Source of the DNA: Cyanophora paradoxa CCMP329
Taxonomy: Eukaryota > Plantae > Glaucophyta
Reading direction: 5' to 3'
DNA length: 64,000 nt
Assembly: GCA_004431415.1 (NCBI GenBank)
Contig: QPMI01000169.1
Span: 1-64,000, forward strand
The notes under the pieces were generated by a model. It saw only the letters and a list, made by a program, of their open reading frames with translations. It ran no database searches and was not told where the DNA came from. Each line of letters starts with the position of its first letter. Position 1 is the first letter of the stretch. Made by a program: the position numbers and the translations under genes. Below are positions 1 to 59,460 of this stretch, piece by piece.

Positions 1-3000
1 GGGCGAGCCGCGGGGCGCACCCGTACGAGATCGCGCAGGTGCTGGCGGCGGCGGTGCCAGGCGGGCTTGCGGGGCTGCATACGATGCTGGCGCACCCGGC
101 GTTCCGGCAGCTCTTCTCAGACCCCAACTTCCAGGCCCACTTCCTCCGCGCCCTCTCCGCCCAGGCCCTCGCCGCCCTCTGCGCCCAGGCCCCCGCTCCC
201 GCCGCCCCCAACGTCCAGCCCCCCCTCATGGTCTCCGCCGCCCTCCAGCACCAGGCCGCCGCCGCCGCTGCCGCCGCCGTCGCCCATCAGCAGCAGCAGG
301 CCGCGCAGCAGCAGCATGCCGCCGCCGCTGCCGCCGCTGCGGCACACCAGCAGCAGCAGCAGCAGCAGCAACAGATCGCGGCAGCTGCGGCTGCTGCTGC
401 GGCGGCGGCGGCTGTGGCATCGCATCAGCAGCGAGAGCAGCAGCGAGAGCAGCAGCAGCGAGAGCAGCAGCAGCGAGAGCAGCAGCAGCAGCAGCAGCAA
501 CAACAACAACAACAAAACCAGCTGGCGGCAGCGATGGCGGCTGCAGCAACGGCGATCCAGCAGCAGCTGTTCCTGCAGCAGGTGTCGGCGTGCGAGAGCG
601 CGGCGGGTCATGGCGCTGTGCAGGGCGGCGTGGTCTCGCCCCGCGCCACCGCCCCCTCGCCTCCGCCGCCCGCTGGCGCCCTCTCGCCCCCGGGGCTTGG
701 CTCGGGAGAGCGCGGCGGGGCGCACCGGGGCGGGCCCCTGCAGCGGATGCGAGCGATGTCGGACGCGGGGATCTCGCAGGGGGCGGTGGCGCCGCACGGG
801 ACGCCGGGGACGGCGTTGAGCTCGAATATGGGGAGCCTGGGCCCCGCGGCGGCCCCGCACGGGCTCTCGGCGCCCTCGACGCCGGGGACGCCCTCGTCGA
901 CGGCCTCGTCGCCCCTCACGGGGGCGATGCCCTCGCCGGCCCTCCCCCCGGCCCCCCAGACGCCCCAGATGGTCGCCGTCTCGCCCCTCATCTCCAGCTA
1001 CCTCGCCCAGCTCAGCCTCCTCGGCCTCCCCAACATCTCCGACCCCCGCCGCCTCCTCTCCACCCTCTCCATGCCCCCGCCCCCCACCAGGGCCCAGCTC
1101 GCCGCCGCCTCCAGCATCGCCGCCGCCGCCGCCGCCGCCGGCGCAGCCCCCCGCTCGCCCCTCGCCGCCCCCTCCGGGCAGCAGGCGCATGCGCAGGCCG
1201 CGGCGTTCGGCACGCCGCCGCAGCATGCGGCCGCCGCGGCGCAGGCGCAGCAAGCGCAGGCGCAGCAGGCGCAGGCGCAGGCGAAGTCTGGGGAGCCGGA
1301 GGCGGCCGTTGCGCCCGAGCGGGGTGCCGACGGCGAGGGCGAAGCTGGCGAGGAGGGCCCGAAGCCGCAAGCAGAGCCGGCGGAGCAGCGCGCCGAGCAA
1401 CCGGCGCCGGCTCCGATGGAGCTCGAGCCGGCGCGGCACGGCAGCAAGCGCTCGCACGCCGCCGCCGCCGCGGGGACCAGCCCCGGGCAGGCCTCCGAAT
1501 CCGCCCCCGGCTCCGCCGGCCCCGGCGCCTCTTCCGGGGGCGGCAAGCGGAGCCGCCCAGCGAGCCCGCTGGAGCTGGCGCCCCTGTCGACCTCGCAATC
1601 GGCGCTCCCGGCGCTCGACCTCCCGAGCCCGTCGCTCAGTGCGTGGCCATGGGGCGGGGCAGCCGGCGGGCGGGCACTGACCTGGGCGCGCGCGGCAGGC
1701 CCCTCGCAGCAGCTGGAGCTCTTTAAGCGGGAGCGCACGCTGAGCGAGGCGGAGGGCGCGCCGCTGCCCCCGAAGCGGCAGACGACGCCGCGTGCGGGGA
1801 CGGCCGGCTCCCGCACCGGCTCTCCCGTCATGCGCCCCAGCCGCAACTCCCCGACCTTGGTGCGGCGCCCCCCGCCCCGCCCCGCCCCGCGCCCCTCACC
1901 GGCCCCGCGCAGCGCATGCATAGCCACGCGCAAGGCGCCGGCCGGAGGCCAAGGGCGGGCGTCGCCGCGGCAGGGCGAGCGCGGGGCGCTCGGGGCGCCG
2001 TCGCCGGTGCCGGGGAGCCCGCTGGGTCGCCGGGTCGGCGGGGGACCCCTCGGCGCTGCAGTTCAACTCGAAGAACCACCTCATGTGGACCGACGAGCTC
2101 CACCTCCGCTTCCTCGCCGCCATCCACCAGCTCGGCGGCAAACGTCCGCCCCGCGCCCCGCCCCGCCCCGCCCCGCCCCGCCCCGCCCCTGCCGCTCAGG
2201 CCTGTGCGGCGGCGCAGTCTCGTGCCCGGCGAAGATCCTGAAGATCATGGACGTCCCCGGGCTCTCCCGCGAACACGTCTCCAGCCACCTCCAGGCCCGC
2301 CCCGCCCCGCCCCGCCCCGCCCGTCTCGGCCCGAGCTGACAGCGCCGGCGAGCAGAAGTACCGGACGCGGCTGCAGAGCGACGTGCAGGCGCGCATGGGC
2401 TCCAAGGGCGGCGGCTCGACGCCGCGCTCCCCGGCCGGACCCTCGGGCGAGGTGCGCCTCCCGCCCGCTCCACGCGGCGCCCCCGCCGCGCGTGACGGGT
2501 GGCAGGCCGCCTCGCCGGCCCTCGCCCCCGAGTCGGGCGACGAGGGCGGCGACGATGCCGGCGCCGGCTTCGGCGGCTCCGCCCCCTCCTTCCTCCCCGA
2601 CTTCTCCGGCTCCTTCCTCGCCCTGGAGTCCCCCTGGGGCGGGCCGGCCCCGCAGCTCTCCCCGACGCCCCTCAGCGAGGAGGGGAGCCCCGGGGGCGGC
2701 CCCCTGGGCAGCGCGCCGGGGGAGGCCTCGGGGCGGGGCGGCGACCCCTGGCCCTCGCTCCTCTCCTACTCGGCCCTCGGCTCCCGCCCGGCCAGCGCCG
2801 CCGCCCGCGAGGCGCCCCTCACGCCCCTCTCGCCCCTCGGCGGCGGCGAGGGCGAGGGCGAGGCCGAGGCCGAGGGCGAGGGCGAGGGCGAGGGGGAGGG
2901 GGCCGAGTCCGGCCCTCCGCCCCTCGGCGCGCCCCGCGAGGGCGCCACTGGGGGCGACATCACCGACGAGTGGTGGTCCTCCCTCGTCGGCGCCTCGGCC

Positions 3001-3258: not shown

Positions 3259-3594
3259 TACCTTTCACCTGTCGATTTCTCTTTGCCCCCGATTTCCCCC
3301 TTTCATAACAACCGATCGTCGATTGTTTCGTAGTACCACGCGCTAGTTTTTCCACACGAACACTCAGTGAGTTTTTCTGTGCCGACTATAAATAACGTGG
3401 GAATCTTACAGATGTTATAGATAGTACCTGTAGCGGTTGCGGTTGAGCAGCTTCCATATTGATTGTCCAAAGAGTAATACATAAACAAATGTGGGATTCT
3501 TGTCCCCCTCAACAGGCCCAGTCCGAGCCGCAGGAGTCGGCCTCATACAAATGTGACCCCCCATGATAGCAGTGCCCCGGCTATTCATGGTCAC

Positions 3595-4647
3595 TGTTAT
3601 GGACGCGTTGCGACCCGGACCCAGCCGGAGTCGAACCAACGACTAAGGGGTGTCAAGGCGGCAGTTCTACCAATAGGCCATCTCGCGAGAGGCTAGTGAT
3701 TCCCCGAATCATCCCGGGTCCTCACACTGCACGCAACATCCCCCCCGCCACGGTGATCTCGACCCCGAGATCCTTCCGTGCGGTTCCATTGCTGCATTTC
3801 ACCTCACAACTCGCGATCTCAACCTCGGTCACATGCCGCACGTGACACCCACTTCACACAGCCGCAACTGCCGCTTTTTTCCGTGCGCGCAGTTTCTAGG
3901 CTCTTCGGCGGCCACCGATGCAGGTGCCGGGCTTATCGGGGTACCGCGATGCAGCGGCCCTCAGCCAGCGCTTCCTAGCGCCCCGCGTGGGATTCGAAGC
4001 CCGGTCTATCCCTCGTCGGGAGTCGAACCAGGTCCGTTAGCAGCCCCCATGTTATGGACGCGTTGCGACCCGGACCCAGCCGGAGTCGAACCAACGACTA
4101 AGGGGTGTCAAGGCGGCAGTTCTACCAATAGGCCATCTCGCGAGAGCTAGTGATTCCCCGAATCATCCCGGGTCCTCACACTGCACGCAACATCCCCCCC
4201 GCCACGGTGATCTCGACCCCGAGATCCTTCCGTGCGGTTCCATTGCTGCATTTCACCTCACAACTCGCGATCTCAACCTCGGTCACATGCCGCACGTGAC
4301 ACCCACTTCACACAGCCGCAACTGCCGCTTTTTTCCGTGCGCGCAGTTTCTAGGCTCTTCGGCGGCCACCGATGCAGGTGCCGGGCTTATCGGGGTACCG
4401 CGATGCAGCGGCCCTCAGCCAGCGCTTCCTAGCGCCCCGCGTGGGATTCGAAGCCCGGTCTATCCCTCGTCGGGAGTCGAACCAGGTCCGTTAGCAGCCC
4501 CCATGTTATGGACGCGTTGCGACCCGGACCCAGCCGGAGTCGAACCAACGACTAAGGGGTGTCAAGGCGGCAGTTCTACCAATAGGCCATCTCGCGAGAG
4601 GCTAGTGATTCCCCGAATCATCCCGGGTCCTCACACTGCACGCAACA
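3595..4647 (-). mobile_element. Tandem-array TRIM (non-autonomous miniature LTR retrotransposon): LTR-I-LTR-I-LTR
   Basis: LTRs 3595-3738, 4050-4192 (1-bp deletion) and 4504-4647, each TG...CA. 311-bp internal regions. On the minus strand the PBS TGGGGGCTGCT abuts the LTR (4039-4049, 4493-4503) and the [14 protein letters not shown] abuts the next LTR (3739-3749). 4-bp TSD TCAC at 3591-3594 and 4648-4651. Confidence 0.92.
3615..3687 (-). promoter_or_regulatory. tRNA-derived internal Pol III promoter (A box + B box) inside the TRIM LTR; present in every full LTR copy
   Basis: Minus strand: A box TGGCCTATTGG (3670-3680) and B box GGTTCGACTCC (3627-3637) at canonical class-I tRNA spacing. T-arm GTTGG-TTCGACT-CCGGC is intact; acceptor, D and anticodon stems are not paired. 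Confidence 0.75.
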
Positions 4648-5153
4648 TCACACTCATACAGTGAAAAACGAACTCTAGCTCTAGATCTGTACGTATACAT
4701 GTCCGACGGTCCGACGTTCTTGGGCAAACTTGAAAGAAAGTAAGTACCGTAGTACTCAGTACTGGGCCGCGGGGCCCGAAACTCGGGCCGCCCCTCATGA
4801 TCAGGGGCCGCCGGGCCGCCCCTCAGGGGCCTAGCTCAGCCCCCGCTCTTTCCTCCGGGCTGAGGGGCCGAGGCGGCGGGGCAGGGCGGGCGGGCGGGAG
4901 GGCCTGCTGGAGGTCCTAAGGAAGCTTTTAAGGCTTCACTCCGGCTGCATGCGCTCGCAGGTTCGCCCGGCAGCCGGGTTTGCAAACAGCAAACGCCTCC
5001 GAGGCTCGTGTGATCATTTGAAATGCAAAGCCGAGCTACAAAAACATGCAAACAGAATACAACAGAAACAGAATACAACGTACAGGAGAACAACCTAGAC
5101 GAATAACGACATAATCCGGCGAAGCAATGTATCTGCGGCGCAGACCGCCTGCG

Positions 5154-6373
5154 TCACTTCTTGCCCTTGCCCTTCGCGATCGCCGCTGCCTTTGGGGCCG
5201 CCTTGCCCTTAAGCTTGGGGGCCGCCTTCTTGGCCGCCGGCTTCTTAGCCGACGCCTTCGGCTTGGCCGCCGGCTTCTTAGCCGCGGCCTTCGGCTTGGC
5301 CGCCACCTTGCCCTTCCCTGCGCCCGCCCCCGTCAGAAACAGCGCACCCCACTGAGCTGTACCCCGCGCACCGGAGGCGGACGAGGCGCGGCTGGAGGCC
5401 TTGGAGGCGGCGCTGCCGCGGGCCTTCTTCGCGGTGGGCTCGCCGTCCGCGCCCGCCGCCTTCCGCTTCACCGCCGCCTTCGGCTTCGCGGGCGCAGCCT
5501 TTGGCTGGGCCGCGGCCTTGGGCTTGGCAGCCTTCTTCGGTGGCGCCTCCTCCACCTCGTCCTGCACGCGCAGTCGTTCAGCAAGGGAAGGCGAGTAGCG
5601 AAGGGTATGCACGACGGACCTCGTCGTCGTCGTCGGCTTCCTGCGAACGGAAGGGCGATCAGTTTGAGGACGGCAGCTGCAGCGGGTCGAGGTTACGAAG
5701 AAGCGCACAGAAGCGGACTTCTCGAAGGCCCAGCTGTGGCCTTCGAACCAGCTGCGGCGCACGAGAAGCTTGTGAAGACGGAAGCGGACGAGGCTCCCGG
5801 TTGGCAAGTCAACCTCCTCGTCTCCGTGCGCAACTACCAGCTCTTCATCGTAGTCTCGATGGCCCAGGACGGTCGCCTCGATGGCCCACTTGTCTGCTGG
5901 CTTCTCCTCGTCCTCGTCCTCGTCGATGGCCGTCAGCGTGAAGTGCTTCGTCGTCTTCACCTCACGCGGCTTGGGCAAGTAAGCTGAGCCGCCGCCGGAG
6001 CACACCGTCGACGTCTTGTTAGAGTTCGCGGACGGCGCGACGACACTCAGCTCGACGCGCGGCGGCTCGCCAAACCCCAGCATCACGAAGGGAAGCTGTG
6101 CGGCAGGAATATCCTTGTTCGGAGCGAACTCGAAACGCCCGTCGGCTGCGACCCCGACGTAGCGGTAGTCGATCGGGAAGCCGTCGTCGTCGTGCCCAGT
6201 GAGGATGTAGCATCGGAGCGAGGAGAGTTCGTCCAGATAGTCGTCCACCATCATAGCAGCGCGCAGGACGAACTTGCCCGTACGGATCTTCTTCGCCCAA
6301 GCCGGCTCTGCGCGTGCAATGATCAGGCGCGGGTCGGTAGGTGCACGGAGAGCGCGCCTTTGGGGGCCATCAT
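5154..6373 (-). CDS. Hypothetical protein: globular N-terminal domain plus Lys/Ala/Pro-rich histone-H1-like C-terminal tail
   Basis: MAPK|EPAWAKKIRTGKFVLRAAMMVDDY... (first intron GC-AG). C-terminus has KPKAAAKKPAAKPKASAKKPAAKK repeats. Stop at 5154. Confidence 0.65.
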
Positions 6374-6885: not shown

Positions 6886-9188
6886 CTACAGGAGGGCGCG
6901 GGTGCGGCCGGCGGCGGCGCGGCGGGCGGCCGCCGAGGGGAGGGCGGCGTCGGCGGGGAGGCGGGGGGCGGGGTGGGAGGCGGGGCGGGCGGCGAGGGGC
7001 GCCGGGTAGGGGCGGGCGGGGTGGCCGAGGTAGACCTGCTGGGGGCGCACGATCTTCTGCTCGGGGTCGTCGAGGTGCTCGAGCCAGTGGGCGAGCCAGC
7101 CGGCCGTCCGCGGCACCGCGAAGAGCACCGTGAAGTACTCCGGCGGGAACCCCAGCGCCTTGTAGATGAGCCCTGCCCCGCCCCCGTCAGCGCCGCGCCG
7201 CTCGGCCCGGGCGGGGGCGGGCGGGCCGGAGTAGAAGTCGACGTTTGGGTAGAGCTTGCGCTCCACGAAGTAGGGGTCCGAGAGGGCCGTCTTCTCCAGG
7301 GCCTGCGCCACCTCCAGCAGGCCCTCCCGCCTGCCCGCCCCGGGGGGCCCCCGCCGCCCCTCAGCCCGCAGAGAAGAGCGGGGGCCGGGGCGCGGTCTGG
7401 GCCGGGCGGACCCAGTCACCGCGAACACCTCTTCGGCCGTCCGCCGCACGAGCCGCGCCCGTGGGTCGTAGTTCTGCGGCCGCGCTCAGCAGGAAAGAAG
7501 GAGGAGGGTGCGAGAGGGGGGGGGGGGGGGGGGGGGCGGGGCGGGGTGCCTTGTAGACGCGGTGGCCGAAGCCGTAGAGGAGGCGGCGCTTGGCCTTGAC
7601 GTCCTCCACGAAGCGCGGGACGGCCTCCACGCTCCCGATCTCCGCCAGCATTCGCAGCACCGCCTCGTTCGCGCCCCCGTGCAGCGGCCCGTACAGCGCC
7701 CCCACCGCCCCCTGCCCCCATTCAGCTGCCCGCCCCGCCGCCGGGGCCGGGGCCGGGCGCGCGCACGGCGGTGGCGGTGTAGACGTCGACGCCCGAGGAG
7801 GCGAGGTGCCTGCGGGGCCCTCGGCCAAGGCGGGGCGGCGGCGGGCGGGCGGGCGGGCCGCATGGCGGCGGTGGAGCAGTTGAGCTCGTGGTCGGCGTGG
7901 AGCATGAAGAGCACGTCTGCCCGCCCCGCCCCGTCGGCGTCGGGGCCGCGGGGCGGCGGGGGGGCGGCGGGGGGGAGGGGGTGGGGGGGGGGGGGGGAGG
8001 GGGGGGCACCGAGGGCGCGGGCGAGGACGGGGTGCGGCTCGTAGCCCGGGCCGGCGTCGGGCGGGCGGTCGAGCATCGCCAGGAAGTTCGCCGCGTAGTC
8101 CAGCGACGCGCTCGGCTGGTTCACGGGCCTGGCACGGCTCGCACACGGCGCGCGGGGCGGGGCGGGCGGGGCGGGGCGGGGCGGACCGGCCCTCGCGGAC
8201 GCGGAGGATGGCGGCGGCGAGGGTGGAGGCCTTGCCGAGGAGGCGGAAGGCCTGCCGCAAGCGCACGGCGGGGTCCCGGTAGACCTTCTCGCCCGCGACG
8301 GCGGGGTTGCCCTCCGGGTGGCACGCCCCGAGGGCCGCGACGGCCGAGGCGAGCATGCTCATCGGGTGCGCGTCGTGCCGGAACGTCCGCAGCAGCGCCA
8401 CCACGTTCTCCGGCACCGCCGCCTCCGCCGCCACCGCCGCACGGAACATCCCCAGCTGCTCCTGCACGCCCCGGCGTCGGCGCGAGGCCGCCCGTTGCGG
8501 GGCCCGGGGCGGCAGGGCGGGGCGGGGCGGGCACGGCGGTGGGGAGCTCGCCGAAGAAGAGGAGGAAGCTGCAGCTGGAGATCAGGGGGCAGGCCAGAAA
8601 AAGAAGGAAGAGACTCACGCCGTCTCCATGAACGTGCTCTTCTCCGCCAGCTCCTCGATCGCGTACCCTGCCCCCGCCCCCGCCCCGCCCCTCGGGACGC
8701 CGCGCCGCGCGCGCGCGGCCTCGCCGACGATCGGACCTCGGTACATGAGGATCCCCTTGTCACCGTCGATGTACGTGATCTTCGACTTGCACGATGCCGT
8801 GTTCATGTATCCTGCAGGGCGCGTGACCCGGTTGTGAAGCGTACGCGTGCGTTGGCCGCGCGCGCGTGGGGCGTCGCTTGCACACCGGGATCGAACATCC
8901 TGCGCAGAGAGCGGGATCGGCTGCGATCGGAAAGGAGCCGTTCGCTACGCGCGCCGCGCCGCGGGCGCACCGAAGTCCTGGACCGTCTTTCTCCGCCTTG
9001 AGCTTGCCGAGCTCCGCTCCGGCAATGACTCCATTGCGAATAGGGATTTCCACCGACTTTCCTGTGCGGTTGTCGACGACGGAGAGGGACTGCCTGAGGC
9101 GCGAATTCTAATGAGCTTCGCGTACAAGCAGATACAGAGCCCCGAGCGCTAAAGCAGGCACGCCGGAGACGTCCTCTAGCGTTTGCAT
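6886..9188 (-). CDS. Citrate synthase, type II-like, resembling the plant peroxisomal/glyoxysomal clade
   Basis: Spliced motifs [92 protein letters not shown]. About 12 introns. The start codon is uncertain (9188 or about 9312). Confidence 0.95.
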
Positions 9189-56759: not shown

Positions 56760-59460
56760 CGCCGGCCCTTGAAACTTTGAAAGCTTGGGCCCAGTCACTG
56801 ATCATGATCATGACTCGCGGCCATTATCATAGTATGGCACTGCAGCATGATCATCGGATCATGAGTGGCGCTCGGGCCCGGGGCCTGGCCGCCGGGCCCA
56901 TGGCCAGTGGGCCCGGGGCCTGCAGCGTGGCAGCGTGGCAGGCCGCCCATCATGGCATGCCGCAGTGCCAGCCGCCAGGCCTGCCAGGCTGCCAACTTGG
57001 CAAGTTAAACTTCCGACTCGGCGAGTTCGAAATGGCGGGGCATATGCATCAATTCAATGATTCCGAAGTTCATGCCGCTGTGCATATCACTGAGTCACAG
57101 TGCTCAGTAGTAGATTATCCCATGTTCCCCCTGGAAGAAAAAGCAGTTTAGTACTACGGCAGACTCAAACTGCCAGCATTTTAGGCACTGCGAACAGTCA
57201 AACTCACTGAGTGGAGTTCAATGCAAGGGTGGTCGAGCCTGGCTGCCAACAGTCGTGCCAGCATGTCTGGTAAGTGGGGAACTTGTGAATTGCAGGCCAA
57301 TGGAAGATTTGTCCATCTCATTGATATACTCAATGCGATATGCACTTGAAGGCTGCCAGTGCTGCCTTGACTCACTGTGGTCACTGAGATGGGTTCAACA
57401 GGACAAGGAAAAGTCACTGAGTGACGTGTGACTCTGTGACTTTTAGAAAAAACCAGTGGCAGCCGCTGCTCTTGCCAGTGAGCTTGGAAGTACGTGGCAG
57501 TAGGATCTGCCACAGAGTGGAGTTTCGAGGCTCAAATTGTGTATCCGGCTGTCATTTCAATGGAAAGTCCCTTTATCTTCTCTTTTTTTCTTTCTCGAAT
57601 GCTGTGGTGCACTTGACTGTTCAGTGCCGGTTCAGTTAAAACTTGAAACTTTGAGCATGAATTAGAAACACTTCTGCAGAAGCATGTTTTTGCAATTGAT
57701 CATGATGCCTGGGCCAAGCTTAAGCTTCTTATAACCAAGTGCTTCCTCTCAGCCAACATTAAACAACAATTGCAAGTACAAGCAAGTCACTGAGTGTTTT
57801 TTGAAGATTATCTTCTCAGAGTGTTGTTGTGAATGAAAATGTTCATTGGAATATCAATCTGAAGATTAATCCAAAGCATGCCTTCTGCTGTGCCTTATTT
57901 GCAATTGTTGCTTGTGTAATTATAATTATGATTCCGATATCATAGTATGATGATGACCGATCATGATGTCCAGGTCAAGCTTGACCATGATCGTGAACAA
58001 GTGTTCAACGGTGCAACGGTTTCCTCCCAGCCAACAGAAAACAAGAAGCACAACGAAGTGCTTTCAAGTTTTCCAAATCAAAACATCATATCAAACCTAA
58101 TGTTCATTTGTTCATTCTTTCTAGATAGTTATTTGTTATGGACGCGTTGCGACCCGGACCCAGCCGGAGTCGAACCAACGACTAAGGGGTGTCAAGGCGG
58201 CAGTTCTACCAATAGGCCATCTCGCGAGAGGCTAGTGATTCCCCGAATCATCCCGGGTCCTCACACTGCACGCAACATCCCCCCCGCCACGGTGATCTCG
58301 ACCCCGAGATCCTTCCGTGCGGTTCCATTGCTGCATTTCACCTCACAACTCGCGATCTCAACCTCGGTCACATGCCGCACGTGACACCCACTTCACACAG
58401 CCGCAACTGCCGCTTTTTTCCGTGCGCGCAGTTTCTAGGCTCTTCGGCGGCCACCGATGCAGGTGCCGGGCTTATCGGGGTACCGCGATGCAGCGGCCCT
58501 CAGCCAGCGCTTCCTAGCGCCCCGCGTGGGATTCGAAGCCCGGTCTATCCCTCGTCGGGAGTCGAACCAGGTCCGTTAGCAGCCCCCATGTTATGGACGC
58601 GTTGCGACCCGGACCCAGCCGGAGTCGAACCAACGACTAAGGGGTGTCAAGGCGGCAGTTCTACCAATAGGCCATCTCGCGAGAGGCTAGTGATTCCCCG
58701 AATCATCCCGGGTCCTCACACTGCACGCAACATGTTGCGTGCAGTGTGAGGAGTGTGTGTGTTGCGTTGCGGGGATCTCCTTAGTCGTTGGTTCGACTCC
58801 GGCTGGGTCCGGGTCGCAACGCGTCCATAACATGGGGGCTGCTGCGGGAATGCAGCAATGGAACCGCACGGAAGGATCTCGGGGTCGAGATCACCGTGGC
58901 GGGGGGGATGTTGCGTGCAGTGTGAGGACCCGGGATGATTCGGGGAATCACTAGCCTCTCGCGAGATGGCCTATTGGTAGAACTGCCGCCTTGACACCCC
59001 TTAGTCGTTGGTTCGACTCCGGCTGGGTCCGGGTCGCAACGCGTCCATAACATATTCAAATGATTAAGGTCATTAAATATTTCAAGTTTTATGAATAATT
59101 CTGGGGGGGTGCGGGGGGGCGGAGCCCCCCTGCTTGTATCATAGTATGGCACCGTGCATCATGGCATCATGATCACATGATCACTGAGTCATGATCATGA
59201 TCATGATCATCGACACCGTGGCACTGTGACATCATGCCATCTGCATGATGGCCCAGATGACTCAGTGACACGAAAATCAAAATTTAATGCACACTCAGTG
59301 ACTGACTCAGTGATCATGACGGACACAGCCTCACACAGGGCGGACACGCAAAGTAAGAATTAAGGCACACTGTACACGTGCATGCACGCACTGCTAGCTA
59401 GCCTAGCTATAGCCCTATAGCTCAGCGGCTAGCTATACTATAGCTAGTAGTACGTGGTAG
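56760..59460. repeat. AT-rich, CpG-poor degenerate repeat/transposon-relic block hosting the second TRIM insertion
   Basis: Abrupt drop in GC, TG/CA excess, many ATCATG/ACTGAGT palindromes, no credible ORF. Confidence 0.5.
58134..59052. mobile_element. Head-to-head TRIM dimer: full element (minus, 58134-58732) fused to an internally deleted element (plus, 58733-59052)
   Basis: LTRs at 58134-58277, 58589-58732, 58733-58832 (rearranged, 100 bp) and 58909-59052. PBS 58833-58851, PPT ending 58908. The whole composite is flanked by direct repeat TATT (58130-58133, 59053-59056). The full unit appears identical to the 3595 copy. Confidence 0.9.

What the first reader, a model, noticed from the sequence alone, without database searches (positions are those of the whole stretch)
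3595..4647. Miniature LTR retrotransposon whose LTR is built around a tRNA-derived Pol III promoter (a tRNA analogue of Cassandra)
Seen in sequence: a 144-bp TG..CA LTR, PBS, PPT, 4-bp TSD and no coding capacity. In element orientation the LTR reads TGGCCTATTGGTAGAAC T GCCGC CTTGACA CCCCT TAGTC GTTGG TTCGACT CCGGC, which maps onto tRNA positions 8-65 with A box, B box and T-arm intact while the other stems have decayed. The sense strand of the 455-bp unit has no TTT run at all, while the antisense strand has T6, as expected if Pol III must read through the element. From memory, the 3' half resembles tRNA-Tyr (CCTTAG(G)TCGYTGGTTCGANTCCGGC). Established: plant Cassandra TRIMs carry 5S-derived Pol III promoters in their LTRs, and I recall small-RNA-derived LTR families named Helenus and Ajax. 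Inference: this is an active SINE/LTR hybrid transcribed by Pol III and mobilised by a gypsy-like partner, possibly an independent origin in this algal lineage.
Basis: partly seen in the sequence, partly recalled or inferred. Interest (0 to 1): 0.85.

Follow-up and report, generated by a model that had tools for sequence, protein, structure and literature searches.

The report
Miniature LTR retrotransposon with tRNA-derived LTR
This is a small, non-coding, recently active LTR retrotransposon whose terminal repeats contain a decayed tRNA-Tyr copy that keeps both RNA polymerase III promoter boxes; this element type was named Helenus in 2024 but has not been reported from an alga like this one, and polymerase III use remains unproven.

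Summary
Window 3595-4647 (minus strand) is a tandem LTR-internal-LTR-internal-LTR array. The LTR is 144 bp (TG..CA). A PBS starting TGG and a polypurine tract abut the LTRs, the TSD is 4 bp (TCAC), and there is no coding capacity. An identical copy at 58134-59052 has its own 4-bp TSD.

The tRNA claim also holds, at sequence level only. The LTR's 3'-half motif retrieved tRNA-Tyr(GTA) genes almost exclusively from viral contigs. A tRNA-Tyr profile hits only the LTR copies in the window (E 3e-4). Exact A and B boxes lie 43 nt apart in the element's sense orientation. There is no cloverleaf: Rfam and ARAGORN both fail.

Polymerase III use is not shown. The "no T-run" argument is not significant in this 72% GC DNA. 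RNA-like contigs show the element is transcribed but give neither start nor strand.

The kind is already published: Helenus/TRIMp3 (Kojima 2024), found in fungi, animals and Selaginella. This would be a new, probably independent, tRNA-Tyr-derived lineage in an alga.

The scan noted the same idea on another piece of this genome (s1-509706).

Verdict: new member of a known kind, moderate interest.

The parts
3591..3594 (.). Target-site duplication TCAC (downstream side in element orientation)
   Evidence: the same 4 nt recur at 4648-4651.
3595..3738 (-). 3' LTR, 144 bp, TGTTG...ATAACA
   Evidence: 100% identical to 4504-4647 and to the LTRs at 58134-59052.
3616..3687 (-). tRNA-Tyr-like module of the 3' LTR (tRNA positions about 1-72). 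A box at 3670-3680, B box at 3627-3637. The T arm is intact; the other stems have decayed.
   Evidence: nhmmer tRNA-Tyr profile E 3e-4; local alignment about 70% identity; motif scans.
3739..4049 (-). Internal region, copy 2 (311 bp). [14 protein letters not shown] is the reverse complement of 3739-3749. PBS TGGGGGCTGCTA is the reverse complement of 4038-4049. A second exact B box lies at 4019-4029.
4050..4192 (-). Middle LTR (143 bp, one 1-nt deletion); tRNA-like module at 4071-4142
4193..4503 (-). Internal region, copy 1 (311 bp). PPT at 4193-4203, PBS at 4492-4503, internal B box at 4473-4483.
4504..4647 (-). 5' LTR, 144 bp; tRNA-like module at 4525-4596. A Pol III start would be expected near 4596-4606.
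   Evidence: The start position is inference only.
4648..4651 (.). Target-site duplication TCAC (upstream side)
58130..59056 (.). Second insertion of the same family: an inverted dimer. The minus-strand LTR-internal-LTR copy at 58134-58732 is joined head to head to a deleted plus-strand copy at 58733-59052. The whole is flanked by TSD TATT.

Best explanation
What it is (shown). This is a Helenus-type TRIM, a non-autonomous LTR retrotransposon of about 600 bp per LTR-internal-LTR monomer. Here it is present as a tandem LTR-int-LTR-int-LTR array on the minus strand. It encodes nothing.

How it moves (inferred from the anatomy). It is copied by the reverse transcriptase and integrase of an unidentified autonomous LTR element. 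Replication would be primed at a 12-nt PBS and at a polypurine tract. Insertion makes 4-bp target duplications.

The tRNA module (shown at sequence level). Each LTR contains, in sense orientation, a roughly 72-nt relic of a tRNA-Tyr with the length of the spliced, intron-less form. The cloverleaf is gone except for the T arm. The A box and the B box are still perfect matches to consensus at canonical spacing.

Activity (shown or roughly estimated). The family is young and active. All copies in the window are identical. There are roughly 75 LTR and 30 internal copies per genome by unitig depth. It is represented in RNA.

Transcription (inferred, about even odds). The retained A/B boxes most likely recruit TFIIIC and Pol III. 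Transcription would then start about 45-50 nt into the 5' LTR, read through the terminator-free element, and end at the first T run in the flank, as for SINEs. This would give an R-U5...U3-R template.
For: Structure:
- LTRs, PBS, PPT and TSD at two independent loci.
- No coding capacity.

tRNA origin:
- The LTR 3'-half motif found 57 loci in viral contigs, and ARAGORN called 54 of them tRNA-Tyr(GTA), nearly all with introns.
- A profile of those spliced tRNA-Tyr sequences hits only the LTR copies in the 64 kb (E 3e-4). The hit is a 54-nt ungapped alignment from the D loop to the acceptor.
- The local alignment covers tRNA positions 1/8-72 at about 70% identity and beats 2000 shuffles.

Promoter boxes:
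- Exact B boxes occur only in this family (10 found, 0.78 expected).
- A+B at correct spacing and orientation occurs only in the LTRs.
- Identity to tRNA-Tyr is 32 of 40 aligned positions in the box-bearing D and T regions, against 8 of 17 in the anticodon arm.

Activity and expression:
- In DNA run X8, unitig depth is 9.6 for the flank, 710-750 for the LTR and 278 for the internal region, with many different flanks.
- Three RNA-like runs cover the whole unit at depth 59-75 but leave 3508-3585 uncovered, so they are not genomic DNA.
- In X15 the U3 start of the LTR is joined only to the PPT. Transcripts there are therefore not read in from upstream flanks.

Precedent: Helenus/TRIMp3 and Cassandra (PMC10886601).
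Against: - No polymerase assignment is possible. All runs were contigs, with no starts or strands.
- The RNA runs may be poly(A)-selected; the library type is not on record.
- In X16 and X18, most coverage entering the LTR start comes from one 1.6-kb flanking contig (depth 44-50, against about 10 for the PPT junction). In X15, contigs of 282 and 1182 nt are joined to the U5 end. Both patterns fit co-transcription with host genes by Pol II.
- The element has no oligo-T terminator. At locus 1 the next T4 on the sense strand is 3078 nt away, and no RNA read-through into that flank is seen.
- The lack of T runs is not significant.
- The tRNA covariance model and ARAGORN do not recognise the module.
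- The tRNA-Tyr panel was fished with a motif taken from the LTR, so identity within that 23-nt stretch is partly circular.
- No divergent copies could be fetched to test whether the boxes are more conserved than the rest.
Confidence: 0.8

Rival explanations
1. This is an ordinary Pol II-transcribed TRIM, and the tRNA-Tyr relic in its LTR is a passenger. The relic could come from a SINE insertion or from a reverse-transcriptase template switch onto a packaged mature tRNA. The boxes look intact only because the capture is young, or because TFIIIC binding serves another role, such as a chromatin boundary, rather than transcription of the element.
For: - RNA-like contigs, plausibly from poly(A)+ libraries, hold the full unit including U3.
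- Long contigs of 282-1655 nt are continuous with either LTR edge.
- There is no oligo-T terminator anywhere in the element, and T4 runs are rare in the flanks.
- No read-through is seen at locus 1.
- The cloverleaf has decayed.
Against: - The two promoter boxes are perfect, correctly spaced and in sense orientation, while the acceptor and anticodon stems are gone.
- The same pattern is conserved across over 200 Helenus families and in Cassandra, for which Pol III transcripts are reported (PMC10886601).
- In X15 the LTR start is never joined to upstream flanks, so transcripts do begin inside the element.
Confidence: 0.42
2. This is not a retrotransposon. It is a local 455-bp tandem repeat (a mini-satellite), or a DNA transposon with terminal repeats, that happens to contain tRNA-like motifs.
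For: - Tandem Repeats Finder reports 2.3 copies of a 454-bp period.
- The second locus has 207-bp perfect inverted termini and a 4-bp TSD.
Against: - The repeat unit resolves into a TG..CA LTR plus an internal region. A TGG-starting PBS lies exactly at one LTR edge and a purine tract exactly at the other.
- Two loci 55 kb apart have different 4-bp TSDs.
- DNA contigs join the LTR edges to many different flanks, and the LTR-to-internal depth ratio is about 2.6, which fits solo LTRs.
- In direct orientation the termini share only TGTT/AACA.
Confidence: 0.03
3. The LTR carries a working tRNA gene, so the element spreads functional tRNA-Tyr copies.
For: Sequence similarity to tRNA-Tyr, with an intact T arm.
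Against: - The tRNA covariance model gives no match even at E 10 on the 144-nt LTR alone.
- ARAGORN calls it only at thresholds that give 119-268 false calls per 64 kb.
- The acceptor, D and anticodon stems do not pair, and the anticodon loop reads CTTGACA rather than holding GTA.
Confidence: 0.01

Closest known systems
Helenus (TRIMp3), Kojima 2024, Biology 13:119 (PMC10886601)
   Same: - Both are TRIMs of a few hundred bp, with LTRs of about 120-320 bp beginning with TG.
- Both have a tRNA-like sequence in the middle of the LTR that keeps box A (TRGCY..YGG) and box B (GGTTC) but usually does not encode a working tRNA.
- Both have a PBS, a PPT and TSDs of 4-5 bp.
- Both are often young and multicopy.
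   Different: - Helenus is reported only from fungi, six animal phyla and Selaginella (Table 1), not from any alga or protist.
- The published isotype resemblances are Thr, Ser, Ala, Pro, Val, Lys and His. Tyr does not occur in the supplementary files.
- The only sequence shared with published consensus sequences is the 11-nt B box.
- This module is more decayed and is not called by tRNA finders.
- The two fungal Helenus LTRs returned carry a T run after the tRNA-like part; here there is none.
Cassandra (plant TRIM with a 5S rRNA-derived Pol III promoter in its LTRs)
   Same: - Both are non-autonomous TRIMs with a small-RNA-gene relic in each LTR, in sense orientation.
- Both form tandem LTR-internal arrays (PMC7215508, title and abstract).
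- Pol III-promoted transcripts are reported for Cassandra (as cited in PMC10886601).
   Different: - The relic here is tRNA-type (type 2 promoter, boxes A and B), not 5S (type 1, boxes A, IE and C).
- There is no 5S match in the Rfam scan.
- The host lineage differs.
tRNA-derived SINEs (SINE2)
   Same: Both have a decayed tRNA head that keeps its A and B boxes as an internal promoter. Both would terminate in the flank at the first T run. Both are non-coding and mobilised in trans.
   Different: SINEs have no LTRs, PBS or PPT, end in a LINE-derived or A-rich tail, and are mobilised by LINE target-primed reverse transcription with variable TSDs. This element has LTR-type anatomy and 4-bp TSDs.
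Retrozymes (plant non-autonomous LTR elements with hammerhead ribozymes in the LTRs)
   Same: Both are small non-coding LTR elements with 4-bp TSDs, a PBS and a PPT. In both, the LTRs hold a functional RNA motif rather than a normal promoter.
   Different: The Rfam scan at E up to 10 finds no hammerhead or other ribozyme match in the element.

Membership tests
TRIM (terminal-repeat retrotransposon in miniature) | Short element (under about 1-1.3 kb) bounded by direct LTRs of about 100-300 bp with TG..CA ends | tested here: met
   The LTRs are 144 bp, TGTTG...ATAACA. A monomer is 599 bp and the tandem array 1053 bp.
TRIM (terminal-repeat retrotransposon in miniature) | PBS next to the 5' LTR and PPT next to the 3' LTR | tested here: met
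   TGGGGGCTGCTA follows the LTR end directly, and GGCGGGGGGGA precedes the LTR start directly, in every copy. The primer tRNA itself was not identified.
TRIM (terminal-repeat retrotransposon in miniature) | No gag/pol coding capacity | tested here: met
   The longest sense ATG ORF is 34 aa. The antisense 105-aa ORF has no homologue and no record.
TRIM (terminal-repeat retrotransposon in miniature) | Target-site duplication of 4-6 bp | tested here: met
   TCAC at locus 1 and TATT at locus 2.
Helenus | tRNA-derived sequence inside the LTR (in the original work, similarity to tRNA or SINE2 by sequence search) | tested here: met
   The tRNA-Tyr profile hits only the LTR copies (E 3e-4). The 3'-half motif retrieves tRNA-Tyr in 54 of 57 loci. 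The alignment is about 70% identical over about 65-70 nt. Caveat: the panel was virus-encoded tRNA-Tyr, not the host's own.
Helenus | Box A (TRGCY ... YGG) and box B (GGTTC) conserved | tested here: met
   TGGCC..TTGG and GGTTCGACTCC lie 43 nt apart on the sense strand.
Helenus | Boxes conserved across family members more than the rest of the LTR | tested here: inconclusive
   All copies in the window are identical. One diverged LTR seen only as a 30-nt contig end keeps ATGCCCTAATGGTAGA. No further copies could be fetched.
TRIMp3 (TRIM transcribed by RNA polymerase III) | Transcripts initiated by Pol III from the LTR's internal promoter | not testable with these tools
   Only assembled contigs of RNA-like runs were available. 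They show presence, not starts, strand or polymerase.
Cassandra | 5S rRNA-derived sequence in the LTR | tested here: not met
   No 5S rRNA match in the Rfam scan at E up to 10.
Retrozyme | Hammerhead ribozyme in each LTR | tested here: not met
   No hammerhead match in the Rfam scan at E up to 10.
Functional tRNA gene | Cloverleaf recognised by tRNA covariance or heuristic models | tested here: not met
   ARAGORN finds 0 genes at default settings. Rfam gives no tRNA hit. ARAGORN calls appear only at thresholds that also give 119-268 calls across the 64-kb window.

The most novel reading that the evidence does not exclude
This is a currently mobile, Pol III-driven LTR retroelement (TRIMp3) that arose independently in a glaucophyte-like alga. 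It would have arisen by capture of a mature, spliced tRNA-Tyr into a TRIM LTR. If so, it is the first such lineage outside fungi, animals and land plants. Because its copies are identical, expressed and sit in a culturable unicellular host, Pol III-dependent LTR retrotransposition could be tested directly.
Probability: 0.35. Interest if true: 0.6.

Novelty: new member of a known kind. Interest (0 to 1): 0.4.

Why it matters
TRIMs whose LTRs carry small-RNA-gene promoters blur the line between SINEs and LTR elements. Only Cassandra (5S-derived) has transcript evidence. For the tRNA-type Helenus, polymerase III use is inferred from sequence conservation alone.

A young, expressed, tRNA-Tyr-derived family in a distant algal lineage would matter in three ways:
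- It would extend the known range of this strategy and support repeated independent origin.
- It suggests an RNA-mediated capture route, because the module has the length of a spliced tRNA.
- It offers a tractable system for asking whether polymerase III can supply the template for LTR-type retrotransposition.

There is also a practical use. Recognising the family prevents these LTRs being mis-annotated as tRNA pseudogenes or as unknown repeats.

Tried and rejected
1. Structure-aware tRNA detection. ARAGORN at default settings found nothing. Rfam found no tRNA at E up to 10 on 1.7 kb or on the LTR alone. ARAGORN's relaxed thresholds call the LTR, but they also give 119-268 calls across the 64-kb window, so that result is meaningless.

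2. The fact is true but not significant.

3. Fishing for more copies.
- The antisense 105-aa ORF found no homologue and no exact record.
- An 18-nt degenerate A-box-region pattern in viral contigs gave 7 chance hits.
- The 20-nt LTR end in metagenome contigs gave 3 chance hits.
- Conservation across subfamilies therefore could not be measured.

4. Primer tRNA.
- The PBS complement was compared with 316 harvested virus-encoded tRNAs. The best match was 4 nt, to a tRNA-Pro, which is uninformative.
- A scan for a T arm followed by the matching acceptor strand gave 29 hits, none of them a tRNA.
- The likeness of the first 8 PBS bases to the murine-leukaemia-virus tRNA-Pro PBS is from memory only.

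5. Autonomous partner. There is no other occurrence of the PBS junction in the window, no other similarity to the unit, and no long ORF in the low-GC stretches.

6. A third B-box-like site, GCTTCGAATCC in the internal region, is not significant at one mismatch (32 found, 22.6 expected).

7. Host identity. The run search codes the organism. Another agent's note names Cyanophora paradoxa, and I did not verify this. The 2019 genome paper for that species reports LTRs at 1.77% of the genome and mentions no TRIM.

Full report
ANATOMY

The stretch 3595-4647 is a 455-bp unit repeated 2.3 times. It resolves into three 144-bp repeats and two identical 311-bp internal regions. The repeats lie at 3595-3738, 4050-4192 (one 1-nt deletion) and 4504-4647.

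The element reads on the minus strand:
- Each repeat reads TGTTG...ATAACA (TG..CA).
- Each is followed directly by TGGGGGCTGCTA, a PBS-like site.
- Each is preceded directly by GGCGGGGGGGA, a polypurine tract.
- The array is flanked by TCAC on both sides (3591-3594 and 4648-4651).
- The longest sense-strand ATG ORF is 34 aa.
- The two antisense ORFs (105 and 125 aa) are what a 62% GC repeat produces by chance. The 105-aa ORF has no homologue and no exact record in the protein collections.

A second insertion of the same family lies 55 kb away, at 58134-59052. It is 100% identical and has its own 4-bp duplication, TATT. Two independent TSD-flanked insertions, with PBS and PPT exactly at the repeat edges, establish an LTR-type, integrase-inserted, non-autonomous element, that is, a TRIM. 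The tandem LTR-int-LTR-int-LTR form is also known for Cassandra (PMC7215508).

IS THE LTR tRNA-DERIVED?

Structure-aware tools say no:
- ARAGORN finds no tRNA in the window.
- Rfam gives no tRNA match at E up to 10, either on 1.7 kb or on the 144-nt LTR alone.
- ARAGORN calls the LTR only at thresholds where it also makes 119-268 calls across the 64-kb window.

So there is no cloverleaf.

Sequence-level tests say yes:
- The exact B box GGTTCGANNCC occurs 10 times in the window, all inside this family, against 0.78 expected.
- An A box (TRGCNNANNGG) 25-45 nt upstream of a B box occurs only in the six LTR copies. Outside the family there are 13 A boxes and no B box in 124 kb of both strands.
- I scanned IMG/VR contigs with the LTR's 3'-half motif, leaving its mismatch positions free. 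This returned 57 loci, and ARAGORN called 54 of them tRNA-Tyr(GTA), almost all with an intron.
- A profile HMM of those tRNA-Tyr sequences with introns removed, run against the window, gives significant hits only on the LTR copies (E 3e-4). The hit is a 54-nt ungapped alignment from the D loop to the acceptor strand.
- A local alignment runs from tRNA position 1 or 8 to 72 at about 70% identity and beats 2000 shuffles.

One caveat applies. The panel was fished with a motif taken from the LTR, so identity within that 23-nt block is partly built in. Two things are independent of that: the motif is tRNA-Tyr-specific in an unrelated database, and the D-loop block ATTGGTAGA falls at exactly the right distance.

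Identity is uneven. It is 32 of 40 aligned positions in the box-bearing D and T regions, against 8 of 17 in the anticodon arm. The T stem still pairs, with two G-U pairs. The acceptor, D and anticodon stems do not.

The ungapped fit to the spliced tRNA leaves no room for the intron that nuclear tRNA-Tyr genes carry. That they carry one is established knowledge, and 53 of the 54 panel genes have one. This points to capture through an RNA intermediate, although later loss of an intron cannot be excluded. The 5' half taken alone is generic D-arm sequence and does not identify an isotype.

The module lies in the same orientation as PBS to PPT, from about 52 to 123 nt into the 144-nt LTR.

IS IT A Pol III PROMOTER?

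This is not shown.

It is true that the sense strand has no TTT and the antisense strand has T6. However, 48% of 455-nt windows of this DNA lack TTT, 78% lack TTTT, and 15% of dinucleotide shuffles of the unit itself lack TTT. T4 runs are simply rare here, about 49 per strand in 64 kb. At locus 1 the next sense-strand T4 is 3078 nt beyond the 3' LTR. At locus 2 the T4 runs lie 51 and 35 nt away.

The DNA run gives rough copy numbers:
- Unitig depth is 9.6 for the single-copy flank, 710-750 for the LTR and 278 for the internal region.
- That is roughly 75 LTR and 30 internal copies per genome, with several different flanks joined to the LTR edge.
- The excess of LTRs fits solo LTRs.

The RNA-like runs are genuinely RNA. 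The neighbouring gene's contig stops at 3496-3503, and 3508-3585 is uncovered in all three runs, while the DNA run covers it. These runs cover the whole unit at depth 59-75.

What the RNA junctions show:
- In X15 the first bases of the LTR are joined only to the PPT. Element RNA there is therefore not read in from upstream, and transcripts begin inside an LTR.
- In X16 and X18, most coverage entering the LTR start comes from one 1.6-kb flanking contig (depth 44-50, against about 10 for the PPT junction).
- In X15, contigs of 282 and 1182 nt are joined to the U5 end.
- No read-through is seen at locus 1.

These patterns fit co-transcription with host genes as well as they fit a terminator-less Pol III unit. 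Contigs give neither starts nor strands. I put functional Pol III initiation at about even odds. In favour are the selective survival of exactly the two promoter boxes and the published precedent. Against are the missing terminator and the long co-transcripts.

COMPARISON WITH KNOWN FAMILIES

Kojima (2024, PMC10886601) defined Helenus as TRIMs with a tRNA-derived sequence in the LTR, conserved TRGCY/YGG and GGTTC boxes, a PBS, a PPT and 4-5-bp TSDs. That paper proposed the umbrella term TRIMp3 and noted that only Cassandra has transcript evidence.

Every structural criterion is met here; see the membership table.

Helenus is listed from fungi, six animal phyla and Selaginella only. The paper's supplementary consensus sequences contain no Tyr-type entry and none of the LTR-specific motifs tested (the 14-nt T-arm segment, the variable-arm segment, the PBS); only the 11-nt B box recurs.

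The element is not Cassandra, because there is no 5S match. It is not a retrozyme, because there is no hammerhead match. It is not a SINE, because it has LTRs, a PBS and a PPT.

Another agent's note names the genome as Cyanophora paradoxa. I did not verify this. The 2019 genome paper for that alga describes LTR elements as 1.77% of the genome and mentions no TRIM.

The same idea was noted by the scan on another piece of this genome (s1-509706).

VERDICT

It is unproven on polymerase use and on the gypsy-like partner. The kind already has a name. This is a new, probably independently arisen, tRNA-Tyr-derived and currently active member of a known kind, in a lineage where none had been reported. 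Interest is moderate.

Noticed in passing
window 58130-59056: The same family occurs as an inverted dimer. A complete minus-strand copy (58134-58732) is joined head to head, U3 start to U3 start at 58732|58733, to a plus-strand deletion derivative. That derivative has LTR nt 1-20, 26 nt of GT-rich filler, LTR nt 91-144, the PBS, the last 60 nt of the internal region and a full 3' LTR. The whole is flanked by one 4-bp TSD, TATT, so both outer termini are U5 ends. It looks as if one fused cDNA was integrated.
   Followed up: partly
window 4019-4029, 4473-4483, 58558-58568 (minus strand): A second exact B box, GGTTCGACTCC, lies in the internal region 8 nt after the PBS. It shares a 12-mer with the LTR's B box but nothing else. 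A 12-mer shared within one 455-bp unit is unlikely by chance (own rough estimate, order 0.01; not computed by a tool). It could be an extra TFIIIC site or a small duplication; this is unexplained.
   Followed up: partly
other loci of the genome, seen through window 3594-3725: A variant LTR has 173 letters in place of 3624-3681, which is the tRNA-like core. It appears in RNA-like run X15 (depth 109) and in DNA run X8 (depth 17). Its visible end keeps ATGCCCTAATGGTAGA. A further RNA contig shows an LTR with 3643-3725 deleted. The full sequences could not be retrieved.
   Followed up: no
window 3300-3590: RNA-like contigs of the upstream plus-strand gene end at 3496-3503 in three runs. The element therefore sits about 95 nt beyond that gene's 3' end, between two convergent genes. 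The minus-strand ORF 5154-6254 has a lysine/alanine-rich tail.
   Followed up: no
window 1-2339 and 6886-8467: The flanking genes look ordinary. One is a glutamine-rich protein with a SHAQKYF/GARP-type Myb motif, on the plus strand. The other is an intron-split citrate-synthase-like gene on the minus strand. Both were judged by eye from ORF translations only.
   Followed up: no
whole window: Oligo-T runs of 4 or more are rare: 49 on the plus strand and 48 on the minus strand in 64 kb. Any argument from missing Pol III terminators therefore needs a genome-specific null model.
   Followed up: yes
L008-L064 (IMG/VR contigs): Fifty-four giant-virus or phage-like contigs carry a eukaryote-type tRNA-Tyr(GTA) gene. 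All but one have an intron of 12-32 nt after position 37-39. The exons are nearly identical across contigs.
   Followed up: partly
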